From positions 41,354,001 to 41,418,000 of the forward strand of contig CM075984.1 of NCBI GenBank assembly GCA_038087875.1: a DNA stretch of 64,000 nucleotides, written 5' to 3'. Of this stretch, positions 58,810-61,632 are shown piece by piece. The notes under the pieces were generated by a model, which searched no databases, had not been told where the DNA came from, and saw only the letters and a list, made by a program, of their open reading frames with translations. The position numbers and the translations under genes were made by a program. The DNA is from Malacoraja senta (taxonomy: Eukaryota). The first letter of the stretch is position 1, and each line of letters starts with the position of its first letter.

Positions 58810-59057
58810 CTTTGGCTGCTCTTTACTGAATCCAAGTGCAAAGCGGAATCTTTCTCATTATGGCTGGCAATACTGCGTGAACTCTCCGAAAACTCATTCC
58901 CATTTGAACCAGTTCCACTTGAGCCATTGCTTTTCATCTCCACATCATCGTGCATCTGCTGCCCTTCTTGATCCGGTGTTTGATTCTGAATATTGCCGCT
59001 TCTTAAATGCAGCACCAATTCGGCCTCTTGGAATCCAGGCTCTGAGTAAGTGGCCAT
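58810..59057 (-). CDS. PER2: PER2 exon 2, first coding exon (MATYSEPGFQ...DDVEMKSNGSSGTGSNGNE...)
   Basis: atacag acceptor at 59068-59069, 10 nt of UTR, AGAATGG start context, gtagga donor; DVxM.SxGSSG motif; all 22 coding exons join into a 3720-nt open frame. Confidence 0.9.
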
Positions 59058-59124
59058 TCTCTGGAGTCTGTATAAAAATGAGAAAGCATAGGAATCATAA
59101 CCAAAACATTGAGTACGAGTCAGG

Positions 59125-59718
59125 AAATCACTTTTTGCCACATTGGTTAAGCTGCATTTGGAATATTGATTGCTCTTCTGGTCACCCCATTACAGGAAGG
59201 ATGGTGAGGCTTTGGAGAGGGTGAATAGGTTTACCAGAATGATGCCTGGATTAGGAGGCTTTAGCTACTTGGAGAGGTTGAATACACTTGGATTGTTTCC
59301 TCTGGAACGCTGGAGATGGAGGTGAGACCTGACAGAATTGCATAAAATTATGAGAGGCATAGATAGGGTTGACAGTCATAACCTTTATCCCAGGATAGAA
59401 ATATCAAATACAGGAGGGCATAGTTTTTAGGTAAGGGGGGGTAATGTGAAAAGGAGATGGAGGGGGGGGGGGGTTGCCCCCCCTATATCTTCACAGAGAG
59501 TGATGTACCTGGAATGAGCTGCCAGGGGTAGTGATGGGGGCAGCAGATACGTTAGTCACATTTAAGAGAGTTTTTGGATACGTACATAAATTTGCAGGGA
59601 ATGAATGGATGGATATAGATCACATGCAGTCAGCTCAAAGCTGGTCTTGGCATCATGTTTGGCAAAGACATTGTGGGCCAAAGGGTTTGTTCCTGTGCTG
59701 TACAGTTCTACTGTTCTA
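59125..59718 (+). mobile_element. Old CR1-type LINE 3' fragment in PER2 intron 1
   Basis: Degenerate WSP..RKD..LER..RFTRMMPGL coding remnants and a GGGCC.AAGGG..TGTTCCTGTGCTGTAC tail. Confidence 0.65.
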
Positions 59719-61101
59719 AATATCATATTCATGACAGATTAAAATAATGCAATCATTCTTGCCAACATTTATATACATGTTTCAACAGTATTAACCAAAT
59801 ATAACTTTGAGCATAGATGATAACTGGTTAAATGGTGATTGGCCATCCAGGGTACAAAATTTGGCTCCAATTGCTAGGGTGCTATGGGAGCAAAGGTAGC
59901 TCCACTTTGGTGATCAATGCAAGTGGCATATGTGTAGCGAGAGTCCATTGTTTGCCATGCTGGGAAAAGCCCAGGCGAGTGTGGCACTGATGTAGCATTT
60001 GGCAGCACCTGGACTATTTAACGGAATTATGAATTATCTGAAGGCTTGTAATAAATGATTTATAGATTGCTGCCTCCATAATGTACAAGTCAGGGGTTTC
60101 TCCCCTGTGGTACCAAAACATTACTGGTCAAATTCAAATACACCCATTCAAGGTGAGGATAGGTCAGGTTTGGCAATGGGATTCGTTGAACAGGTGAGCA
60201 CAGGAATAGTGGACCGAATGGCATCCTTTCTGCTGTTGGGATTCTTTGAATGCTCCAAACTGCGGCTTATCTGTTCAGAATATTTTTTCTAAATACTGTA
60301 TTTTTCTACTCGTTTGTTTTCTCACATTTCTTACACTGCATTGGCTCCGGTTGTAACGCTGCAACTACACGACAAAAAAAACACCGAGTTTCACAATAAA
60401 CTTAATCATCGGGTGTCAGAAAACTGCAGGAAACCATCACGATTTCATGTTCCTGATAACTTTTGTTTAAACCAGCAGGGCAAAGACATTTATCAGAACA
60501 ATTAAAGTCTCGTCTTTCGGCGCCGGCTGAAATGTTACAGTTAAATGGAAAAAACTTAGGAAACCAAAATCGATCAAAGCTATAGCTTGACAACTGAGCA
60601 CGACAGAAAGGCGTAGCATTTTGCAACTGGGCTGTATACCGGGTCGCTTTAACTTACCTCGCTGCGTGTTCAACGCAGATCACTTCACGGTGAATATAAC
60701 ACCACCACTGTATAGGACCAGATCACCTAATCTCTCTCCAAACACATTTCTCATAACAAGTTTCCCCGGCACCAGAGGGATTACATCACTGATCTACACA
60801 ATAGATCTACTGATTAAAAGCCACGAGTTGAAGACCTGAAGTGATTAAGACCTTAAGATTGAAGGTCTGAAGGGTCTCGACTCGAAATGTCACTCATTCC
60901 CTTCTCTCCAGAGACGTTGCCTGTACCGCTGAATTACTCCAACATATCTTCGGTGTAAACCGGCACACTCAGCTCCTTCCCACACCTTAATCATTCTGAC
61001 CGCAGTGAATTAAATCCTTGTATATGAAAACCGCGACACCTATTCATCGGGTGAACCGCGATCTATCCAGAGGCTCGGAAATATAGCAGGCGATTTCTTA
61101 C

Positions 61102-61460
61102 CCCGTTTTCAGGGAGGTGAGAAGAAACTCTTGGAAGAAGCAGAGCAAGTGAAGCGACACTCCTGTAGGGCAGCGCTACGACTGCTGCCGGCCGGCCGAC
61201 CGATCGACGGACTGACGGACGGCTGCGAACTGAGGCAATGGCTACTGCTCGCTACACTCGCCCCAACTCGGGCTGCTGCAACTCGACCCACTGTTGCAAC
61301 TCGGCCCGCTGTTGTGCAACTCGGCTGCTCGCTACATTCAGGTCGCTGTTGCAACTCGACTGCTCACTACATTCAGGTCGCTGTTACAACTCGACCCACT
61401 GTAACAACCAAAGATCCTTTGGTAACAACTCGACTGCTGCCGTTCGCTACATTCGCGTCG
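61102..61460 (-). other. PER2: Predicted non-coding PER2 exon 1 (5'UTR)
   Basis: CpG-rich; donor GG|gtaaga at 61101; TSS inferred about 20 nt downstream of the CACGTT E'-box by analogy to mammalian Per2. Confidence 0.65.
61245..61460. repeat. Imperfect tandem repeat (CAACTCG and CTACATTC modules) inside the PER2 5'UTR
   Basis: CAACTCG occurs 7 times; CTACATTC occurs 3 times plus one CTACACTC. Confidence 0.85.
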
Positions 61461-61463
61461 CTG

Positions 61464-61632
61464 CACACACCACAGAACGTGACGGGCCCCGCCTCCGCCC
61501 CATTGGCCGGCGGCTCCCGCGGAGAACCACCCCCTCCATTGTTACGTCGGTCCCAGCGGGCGGCGGCGCGCCGCCATTGGCCGGCGAACCTGCCCATCGG
61601 CCGATGGCTACAAGCCTCACGTGGAATCCAAT
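61464..61632 (-). promoter_or_regulatory. PER2: PER2 CpG-island promoter: E'-box CACGTT (61476-61481) with partner TGTGTG, GC boxes (61487-61500), CCAAT boxes (61502-61506, 61576-61580), canonical E-box CACGTG (61618-61623)
   Basis: Motifs read directly in a CpG-rich island immediately upstream of the predicted exon 1. Confidence 0.75.

What the first reader, a model, noticed from the sequence alone, without database searches (positions are those of the whole stretch)
61252..61452. Three AUG-UAG start-stop minimal uORFs in the PER2 5'UTR, multiplied by a tandem repeat
Seen: on the minus strand the predicted 5'UTR (exon 1 plus 10 nt of exon 2) contains only three ATGs. Each is immediately followed by TAG (GAATGTAG; plus-strand CTACAT at 61447-61452, 61367-61372, 61332-61337). 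A fourth repeat unit reads GTGTAG (61252-61257). Established (recalled): mouse Per2 has one start-stop minimal uORF in exon 1, overlapping a D-box, which represses translation and mediates temperature-dependent PER2 synthesis. Inference: the element may be conserved from cartilaginous fish to mammals and amplified here into a copy-number translational rheostat in an ectotherm, while the D-box consensus TTATGTAA is lost at these sites.
Basis: partly seen in the sequence, partly recalled or inferred. Interest (0 to 1): 0.85.

Follow-up and report, generated by a model that had tools for sequence, protein, structure and literature searches.

The report
Repeated start-stop codons, skate PER2 leader
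The untranslated leader of a skate's PER2 clock gene really carries three start codons each followed at once by a stop, multiplied by a small tandem repeat, but they arose within skates and do not descend from the similar mammalian Per2 element, so a regulatory role is only plausible.

Summary
On the minus strand, ATGTAG sits at 61452-61447, 61372-61367 and 61337-61332, and GTGTAG at 61257-61252. These are the only ATGs between the E'-box and the PER2 start codon, and copies 2 and 3 lie in a 35-nt tandem duplication.

The gene is PER2. The exon 1 to exon 2 junction (61102|59067) is confirmed by spliced RNA contigs from four runs of related skates. One contig carries at least 305 nt of exon 1 and runs through a 35-nt-type unit.

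The evolutionary reading fails:
- By the papers held here, the mammalian Per2 minimal uORF is most likely ATGTGA, inside the second half of the E'-box tandem element, not in a D-box.
- At that position the skate has TGTGTGC.
- Sawfish, whale shark, chimaera and gar have no start-stop in the leader.
- A second skate genus has two copies.

The ATG-TAG is therefore a skate-lineage gain, probably a one-base change from a GTGTAG-type unit, then copied by repeat expansion.

All three uAUGs are in weak context (pyrimidine at -3, U at +4), while the main AUG is strong. One start-stop arises by chance in about 9% of shuffles.

My best reading is a lineage-specific minisatellite in the leader that may mildly and additively damp PER2 translation. 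Function is untested. Interest is modest.

The parts
61618..61623 (-). Canonical E-box CACGTG of the PER2 promoter
   Evidence: Motif scan. The flank ATTCCACGTGAGG is conserved in Rhinoraja, Pristis, Rhincodon and Callorhinchus.
61539..61548 (-). D-box/CRE-like site CCGACGTAAC between two CCAAT boxes (61576-61580 and 61502-61506). Likely counterpart of the D-box in the promoter's E-box/D-box/CCAAT module.
   Evidence: Identical in Rhinoraja. The order E-box, D-box, CCAAT matches the light-responsive module of PMC2759001. Gar has CATGG-CATGTG-TTACATAA-ATTGG about 150 nt upstream of its E'-box.
61464..61481 (-). E'-box tandem (EE) element: CACGTT, 6-nt spacer CTGTGG, then TGTGTG. The mammalian minimal uORF sits in the second half of this element; the skate has no ATG here.
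   Evidence: Mammalian sequence CACGTTttccacTATGTGa from PMC2254435 and PMC11457068. uORF location from PMC10556633.
61447..61452 (-). ATGTAG copy 1, 24 nt after the E'-box. It would be about +10 if the start site sits as in mouse, so transcription is uncertain. Context: C at -3, T at +4.
   Evidence: Conserved in Rhinoraja inside a 92%-identical core-promoter block. Pristis and Rhincodon have CCAAGCG/CCAAGTG at the aligned position.
61367..61372 (-). ATGTAG copy 2, in the first 35-nt unit. Context: T at -3, T at +4.
   Evidence: Rhinoraja has one ATGTAG in the array.
61332..61337 (-). ATGTAG copy 3, in the second 35-nt unit. This duplication is absent from Rhinoraja.
   Evidence: An RNA contig of a related skate aligns over 61317-61358.
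61252..61257 (-). GTGTAG unit (GAGTGTAGCGAGC), probably the ancestral form of the repeated motif
   Evidence: The same GTGTAG unit is present in Pristis and in the two skate mRNA contigs; Rhinoraja has GTACAG.
61241..61464 (-). Compound GC-rich minisatellite in exon 1: 18-nt units (CAGYGGGYCGAGTTGCAA) and 35-nt units that add CGACCTGAATGTAGYGAG. It includes a 21-nt insert with the palindrome CCAAAGGATCTTTGG (61408-61422).
   Evidence: This is the least conserved part of exon 1 (79% identity with indels against Rhinoraja). The Pristis exon 1 has a single unit.
61102..61461 (-). PER2 exon 1 (5' untranslated). The 3' end is shown; the 5' end is inferred.
   Evidence: The junction 61102|59067 appears in mRNA contigs L001 and L008 and in RNA runs X2 and X3. 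The 5' end is inferred from the mouse E'-box at -20/-15 (PMC6561950). The X3 contig carries at least 305 nt of exon 1.
58810..59067 (-). PER2 exon 2: 10 nt of leader, then the start codon at 59057-59055 in strong context (A at -3, G at +4)
60780..60789 (-). Intron-1 D-box-like site GTGATGTAAT (it contains ATGTAA) in a block conserved among batoids. It is spliced out of the observed mRNAs.
   Evidence: Pristis has GTTACGTAAT, Rhinoraja GTTACGCAAT and Rhincodon GTTACATAAT, so the ATG is not conserved.

Best explanation
Exon 1 of skate PER2 (the 5' untranslated leader) contains a lineage-specific GC-rich minisatellite. It was built from motifs already present once in other cartilaginous fishes (GAGTTGCAAC-like and GAGTGTAGCGAGC).

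In the skate lineage a unit acquired ATG-TAG. In the array this is most simply a single G-to-A change in GTGTAG; at the copy 1 position sawfish and whale shark carry CCAAG instead. Replication slippage or unequal exchange then copied the unit. That gave two ATGTAG in Rhinoraja and three in this species, whose extra copy comes from a 35-nt duplication.

Copies 2 and 3 are very probably in the mature mRNA; copy 1 sits at or just after the start site. As AUG-UAG start-stops in weak initiation context they would capture only a fraction of scanning ribosomes. They lie about 240-280 nt upstream of a strong main AUG, so any effect should be a mild, additive damping of PER2 translation.

They are not homologous to the mammalian Per2 minimal uORF, which lies inside the E'-box tandem element, and they were never D-boxes.

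Shown: sequence, repeat structure, splice junction, presence or absence across species, and contexts. Inferred: start site, order of mutational events, and any effect on translation.
For: - Sequence and repeat anatomy.
- Gene identity: the best relatives are named PER2 of rays, sharks and skates.
- Splice junction 61102|59067: seen in four RNA contigs from different runs of related skates.
- Transcript reach: the X3 contig (1655 nt, depth 106) has at least 305 nt of exon 1. It aligns over 61317-61358 and continues 27 nt further.
- Other skate: Rhinoraja longicauda has ATGTAG at +24 and +83 from the E'-box and lacks the 35-nt duplication.
- Outgroups: Pristis, Rhincodon, Callorhinchus and Lepisosteus have no start-stop in the leader. 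They carry ordinary short uORFs or none. Pristis and the fourth skate unit read GTGTAG.
- Contexts: uAUGs have C or T at -3 and T at +4; the main AUG has A at -3 and G at +4.
- Dose effect: repression of a Per2-promoter reporter increases with the number of synthetic uORFs (PMC10556633).
Against: - There are no RNA reads from this species itself.
- The start site is inferred by analogy.
- The two full-length mRNA contigs (L001, L008) both stop at the homologue of about 61312, downstream of all three ATGTAG. This could be a real start site rather than an assembly break in the repeat.
- The letters of the X3 contig over the ATGTAG homologue were not shown (5 mismatches in 42 nt), so the hexamer itself is not confirmed in any transcript.
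- Retention of two ATGTAG in two skate genera gives weak evidence of constraint, which a purely neutral by-product would not predict. By chance, a hexamer survives intact about 0.24 of the time at 79% identity.
Confidence: 0.6

Rival explanations
1. The start-stops are a selected, convergent counterpart of the mammalian Per2 minimal uORF. Skates independently evolved AUG-stop elements just downstream of the E'-box, and copy number tunes PER2 synthesis, possibly in response to temperature or signalling.
For: - ATGTAG is kept in at least two copies in two skate genera despite 79% identity and indels in the array.
- Copy 1 lies only 16 nt from the position of the mammalian uORF, in the same core-promoter block (PMC10556633).
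- uORF number gives graded repression on a Per2 reporter (PMC10556633).
- The mouse uORF is reported to mediate temperature-dependent PER2 translation (Miyake 2023, as summarised in PMC13022746 and PMC11570493).
Against: - All three have weak Kozak contexts.
- Conservation of copy 1 is explained by the 92%-identical core promoter.
- uORF content of this leader turns over freely among relatives. A 7-codon uORF appears in the L001/L008 species. Pristis has 10- and 4-codon uORFs plus an 18-codon ORF at the E'-box tandem, and Callorhinchus has a 30-codon uORF.
- A single start-stop arises by chance in 9% of shuffles.
- There are no functional data.
Confidence: 0.18
2. The hexamers are mostly outside the mature mRNA. 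The main start site lies within or downstream of the repeat array, near the homologue of 61312 where two mRNA contigs end, so the leader has no uORF.
For: - L001 and L008, from different runs, start within 2 nt of each other at the homologue of about 61312.
- Initiator-like TCAGTYC motifs lie at 61233 and 61215.
Against: - The X3 contig of another skate runs about 100 nt further 5', through a 35-nt-type unit.
- De Bruijn contigs are expected to break in such repeats.
- The E'-box, CCAAT and GC-box architecture places the core promoter upstream of the array. In mouse the start site is 15-20 nt after the E'-box or further upstream (PMC6561950, PMC2254435).
Confidence: 0.15
3. The repeat works at the DNA level, as reiterated binding sites or a structured region downstream of the start site that modulates transcription. 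The ATG-TAG letters are incidental.
For: - Each unit carries the palindrome GTTGCAAC or a near variant, and a related GTGCAACATTGCAAG is present in whale shark exon 1.
- The leader folds strongly (-145 kcal/mol, z = -2.4).
Against: - No known factor motif was recognised.
- The array is the least conserved part of exon 1.
- Rfam finds nothing.
Confidence: 0.07

Closest known systems
Mammalian Per2 minimal (start-stop) uORF
   Same: - A one-codon AUG-stop in the leader of the same gene.
- It lies within about 25 nt downstream of the CACGTT E'-box (copy 1) or further into exon 1 (copies 2 and 3).
- In mouse it represses reporter output (PMC10556633) and is reported to mediate temperature-dependent PER2 translation (PMC13022746, PMC11570493).
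   Different: - The mammalian hexamer is most likely ATGTGA inside the second half of the EE-element (CACGTTttccacTATGTGa). The skate has TGTGTGC there.
- The skate hexamers are ATGTAG, 16 to 131 nt further downstream, in 2-3 copies on a tandem repeat, and in weaker context (pyrimidine at -3 against A at -3 in mouse).
- They are absent from sawfish, whale shark, chimaera and gar, so they are not orthologous.
Start-stop uORFs in general (for example plant NIP5;1 AUGUAA and human start-stop elements; from my own knowledge, not checked here)
   Same: An AUG directly followed by a stop. No peptide is made, and ribosomes can stall or reinitiate.
   Different: No ribosome-occupancy or reporter data exist here. 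Multiplication on a minisatellite is unusual, but its function is unproven.
D-box (PAR bZIP / E4BP4 site, RTTAYGTAAY) of Per2
   Same: It shares the core letters ATGTA.
   Different: - The ATGTAG sites match only 6 of 10 consensus positions, and their ancestors read GTGTAG or CCAAGCG, never a D-box.
- D-box-like sites of this gene lie elsewhere, at 61548-61539 upstream of the E'-box and at 60789-60780 in intron 1.
Minisatellites in 5' leaders
   Same: GC-rich 18/35-nt units, indel-rich between species, with copy number differing between genera.
   Different: No within-species polymorphism was seen. One DNA run has the same copy number, and it may come from the assembled individual.

Membership tests
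Start-stop (minimal) uORF | AUG immediately followed in frame by a stop codon | tested here: met
   Three ATGTAG at 61452, 61372 and 61337.
Start-stop (minimal) uORF | Lies in the transcribed 5' leader, upstream of the main AUG | tested here: inconclusive
   Exon 1 and its junction are confirmed by RNA contigs of related skates. One contig covers the homologue of 61317-61358 and beyond, but two others stop at about 61312. No RNA from this species was available, and copy 1 is only about +10 from the inferred start site.
Start-stop (minimal) uORF | Initiation context good enough to be recognised | tested here: not met
   Position -3 is C (copy 1) or T (copies 2 and 3), and +4 is T in all. The main AUG has A at -3 and G at +4.
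Start-stop (minimal) uORF | Ribosome occupancy on the AUG-stop and an effect on main-ORF output | not testable with these tools
   This needs ribosome profiling or reporters.
Orthologue of the mammalian Per2 minimal uORF | Hexamer inside the E2 half of the EE-element, 7 nt after CACGTT | tested here: not met
   The skate reads CACGTT-CTGTGG-TGTGTG-C. The mammalian sequence is in PMC2254435 and PMC11457068, and the uORF location in PMC10556633.
Orthologue of the mammalian Per2 minimal uORF | Continuity through intermediate lineages | tested here: not met
   No start-stop in the leaders of Pristis, Rhincodon, Callorhinchus or Lepisosteus.
D-box (RTTAYGTAAY) | Match to the consensus at the ATGTAG sites | tested here: not met
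   CGAATGTAGC and TGAATGTAGY match 6 of 10 positions (read). No TTAYGTAA occurs within the promoter or exon 1.
PER2 gene | Coding exons orthologous to vertebrate PER2 | tested here: met
   A 306-aa exon finds stingray PER2 at E = 7e-64. Relatives are named PER2. Skate mRNA contigs align exon by exon at 85-99% identity. Exon-by-exon protein identity to Amblyraja PER2 is mostly 75-97%.
Tandem repeat / minisatellite | Head-to-tail units with species-specific copy number | tested here: met
   Tandem Repeats Finder periods of 35 and 18 nt, repeat families D1-D4, and differing numbers in Rhinoraja, the mRNA contigs and Pristis.

The most novel reading that the evidence does not exclude
Skates independently evolved a multi-copy AUG-UAG module in the PER2 leader. 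It does the same job as the mammalian Per2 minimal uORF, namely signal- or temperature-dependent gating of PER2 synthesis, with repeat copy number setting the gain. That would be convergent translational control of the same clock gene in an ectotherm.
Probability: 0.12. Interest if true: 0.7.

Novelty: new member of a known kind. Interest (0 to 1): 0.3.

Why it matters
Function would make this a second, independent origin of start-stop control on PER2. That would argue that damping PER2 translation through a peptide-less uORF is a recurrent solution, not a mammalian peculiarity tied to body-temperature cycles. It would also offer a natural copy-number series (2 in Rhinoraja, 3 here) to test dose dependence.

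Without function, it is an ordinary example of uORF turnover riding on a minisatellite.

The comparison also corrects a premise. The mammalian element sits in the E'-box tandem, not a D-box. The E-box / D-box-like / CCAAT / E'-box order of the PER2 promoter is conserved between the two skates. Sawfish, whale shark and chimaera also keep the E-box-to-E'-box arrangement with CCAAT boxes between.

Tried and rejected
- **RNA from this species.** The two run searches found only DNA runs of the same organism (X1, X8) and small RNA runs of related organisms. X8 did not cover the array, so copy number among individuals could not be compared.
- **Fetching the X3 contig.** I searched for its partial protein and found no skate fragment.
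- **Loci that could not be used.** Hemitrygon and Hemiscyllium gave no DNA because the files are too large. Isoform X2 proteins of Pristis and Scyliorhinus are not on record. In the emu locus the promoter lies more than 10 kb from the coding start.
- **A false lead of my own.** For a while I took the intron-1 D-box-like ATGTAA (60789-60780) as the counterpart of the mammalian uORF. I dropped this once PMC10556633 and the published EE-element sequence placed the mammalian uORF next to the E'-box.
- **ATG depletion in the leader as a sign of selection.** Not significant: shuffles give 2.0 ATGs against 3 observed.
- **Rfam.** Nothing.
- **Miyake et al. 2023.** The paper is not held, so its claims are cited only through reviews.
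- **A discrepancy in the literature.** PMC10556633 prints ATGTAA in one figure legend and ATGTGA in its discussion. I follow ATGTGA because it matches the published sequence.

Full report
**1. What is in the sequence**

Read on the minus strand, 61700-61100 is a CpG-rich promoter followed by a repeat-rich exon. Its landmarks:
- a canonical E-box CACGTG at 61623-61618;
- CCAAT boxes at 61580 and 61506;
- a D-box/CRE-like CCGACGTAAC at 61548-61539;
- the non-canonical E'-box CACGTT at 61481-61476, followed by a 6-nt spacer and TGTGTG.

ATGTAG occurs at 61452, 61372 and 61337. GTGTAG occurs at 61257.

For any start site between 61500 and 61453, the leader holds exactly these three ATGs, each followed by TAG. 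The leader here means exon 1 down to the GG|GTAAGA donor at 61102, plus the 10 nt of exon 2 before the ATG at 59057.

Tandem Repeats Finder reports a 35-nt period at 61315-61395 (93% matches) and an 18-nt period at 61273-61325. The repeat finder links copy 1 to the same family at 69% identity.

**2. Is it more than chance?**

The three hexamers are copies of one repeat unit, so they count as one origin event. In 5000 dinucleotide-preserving shuffles of the 379-nt leader, at least one start-stop appears in 9.4%. The mean ATG count is 2.0, so the leader is not significantly depleted of other ATGs. ATGTAG is not enriched window-wide. The multiplicity is explained by tandem duplication, not by repeated selection.

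**3. Gene and exon structure**

- A 306-aa exon translation finds a stingray PER2 at E = 7e-64. That protein's relatives are PER2 of rays, sharks, skates, chimaera and bony vertebrates.
- Two Logan mRNA contigs from related skates (L001 and L008, about 95% identical in coding exons) align exon by exon to the window. Both join 61102 directly to 59067.
- RNA runs of two further organisms show the same junction. The loose ends at 61102 are the reverse complement of the exon 2 start.

Exon 1, its donor and the 10-nt exon 2 leader are therefore established, though in relatives and not in this species.

**4. How far 5' does the transcript reach?**

- L001 and L008 both stop at the homologue of about 61312, inside the repeat. 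This may be an assembly break or a real start site.
- A 1655-nt contig of run X3 (depth 106) carries at least 305 nt of exon 1. It aligns to 61102-61260, then has 81 nt where the window has 56. It then aligns to 61317-61358 with 5 mismatches and continues for 27 nt more. That stretch is a 35-nt-type unit, the kind that carries ATGTAG here. The tool did not print its letters, so the hexamer itself is not confirmed in RNA.
- In mouse the E'-box lies at -20/-15 from the classical start site (PMC6561950) or -23 (PMC2254435). RefSeq starts further upstream. By that analogy the skate start site is near 61461. That would place copies 2 and 3 at about +90 and +125, and copy 1 at about +10, which is too close to the cap to be read well, if it is transcribed at all.

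**5. Comparison with other species**

I fetched the PER2 loci of Rhinoraja longicauda (a second skate genus), Pristis pectinata, Rhincodon typus, Callorhinchus milii and Lepisosteus oculatus.

The E-box-to-E'-box promoter architecture with CCAAT boxes between is shared by all four cartilaginous fishes fetched. The gar keeps an E'-box with an E-box/D-box/CCAAT module about 150 nt upstream.

Start-stops and other upstream ORFs within 900 nt after the E'-box:

| Species | Start-stops | Other upstream ORFs |
|---|---|---|
| This window | +24, +104, +139 in exon 1; +690 in intron 1 | none in exon 1 |
| Rhinoraja | +24, +83 | not examined here |
| Pristis | none | 18, 10 and 4 codons |
| Callorhinchus | none | 30 codons |
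| Rhincodon | none | one ATG in the E'-box tandem |
| Lepisosteus (gar) | only ATGTAA of a D-box at +443, whose transcript status is unknown | not examined here |

At the position of copy 1, Pristis and Rhincodon read CCAAGCG and CCAAGTG. Pristis, the fourth skate unit and both mRNA contigs carry GAGTGTAGCGAGC, one transition away from GAATGTAG. The Pristis exon 1 is about 155 nt with a single unit. The skate exon 1 is about 360 nt because the units multiplied.

Between the two skates, the block from the E'-box to copy 1 is 92% identical. The array is 79% identical with many indels. So ATG-TAG is a skate-lineage novelty, and the third copy is specific to this species' lineage.

**6. What the mammalian element really is**

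- PMC10556633 states that the Per2 uORF is only a start and a stop codon, is conserved among 22 mammals and represses reporter output. [quoted passage not shown] One figure legend prints ATGTAA.
- The published EE-element is cgcggtCACGTTttccacTATGTGacagcg in mouse and human (PMC2254435, PMC11457068). It contains ATGTGA 7 nt after CACGTT.
- The Per2 D-box TTATGTAA / CTTATGTAAA is a separate element of the promoter's E-box/D-box/CCAAT module (PMC2759001, PMC3001056).

The skate has TGTGTGC at the truly homologous place. The skate's own D-box-like sites are at 61548-61539 and, in a block conserved among batoids, at 60789-60780 in intron 1. In that intron block the central letters vary (TG, CG, CA) and the ATG is not conserved.

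**7. Likely mechanism**

Positions -3/+4 are C/T for copy 1 and T/T for copies 2 and 3. The main AUG has A/G. Most scanning 40S subunits should therefore leak past each uAUG. Those that initiate terminate at once, and they have 240-280 nt in which to reinitiate.

The expected effect is a small, roughly additive reduction of PER2 synthesis. This is in line with the graded repression seen when synthetic uORFs are added to a Per2-promoter reporter (PMC10556633).

The leader is also strongly structured (-145 kcal/mol, z = -2.4), which by itself would lower translation. Nothing here bears on temperature dependence.

uORF content in this leader turns over freely among relatives. The L001/L008 species and Pristis each have a short uORF near the 3' end of exon 1 that this species lacks. 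That fits weak constraint on which uORF is present.

**8. Verdict**

- The claims of deep conservation and of a D-box relationship are rejected.
- This is a new, non-orthologous instance of a known kind of element, with unproven and probably modest function.

Noticed in passing
window 60639-60796 (minus strand), intron 1: This block is conserved in Rhinoraja (80% over 294 nt) and Pristis (76% over 168 nt). It holds a D-box-like site (GTGATGTAAT here, GTTACGTAAT in Pristis, GTTACATAAT in whale shark). About 120 nt downstream is a conserved donor-like GAG|GTAAGT near 60667. It could be an intronic enhancer comparable to the mouse +197 E4BP4 site (PMC3001056), or an alternative first exon.
   Followed up: partly
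window 61502-61623 (minus strand): The order is E-box, CCAAT, CCGACGTAAC, CCAAT, then the E'-box. This resembles the E-box/D-box/CCAAT light-responsive module of zebrafish per2 (PMC2759001). Gar shows CATGG-CATGTG-TTACATAA-ATTGG about 150 nt upstream of its E'-box (L006:1213-1260).
   Followed up: partly
window 61408-61422 (minus strand): A perfect palindrome CCAAAGGATCTTTGG lies inside a 21-nt insert that Rhinoraja lacks. It forms the tightest hairpin in the predicted fold of the leader.
   Followed up: no
window 59128-59769 and 60840-60946: Intron 1 holds high-copy interspersed repeats. Word depth in the DNA run X1 reaches 7,000-44,000 there, against about 25 elsewhere. Copies of the 60869-60945 piece recur in the Rhinoraja locus.
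   Followed up: no
L001:157-180 and L008 (homologue of window about 61133): The related skates' mRNA has CCATGAG where this window has CCAAGAG, which creates a 7-codon uORF near the end of exon 1. Pristis has a 4-codon uORF at the same place.
   Followed up: partly
window 61237 and 61572: The DNA run X1 of the same organism differs from the assembly at two sites in the promoter and exon 1 (A>G and C>T on the plus strand). It has the same repeat copy number.
   Followed up: no
L003:3995-4000 and L005:5983-5988: Sawfish and whale shark each have an ATG straddling the spacer and second half of the E'-box tandem, opening 18- and 28-codon ORFs. An ATG at this element is therefore common, but only mammals have it as a start-stop.
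   Followed up: partly
literature: PMC10556633 gives the mouse Per2 uORF as ATGTAA in the legend of Fig. 3C and as ATGTGA in its discussion. The published EE-element sequence agrees with ATGTGA.
   Followed up: yes
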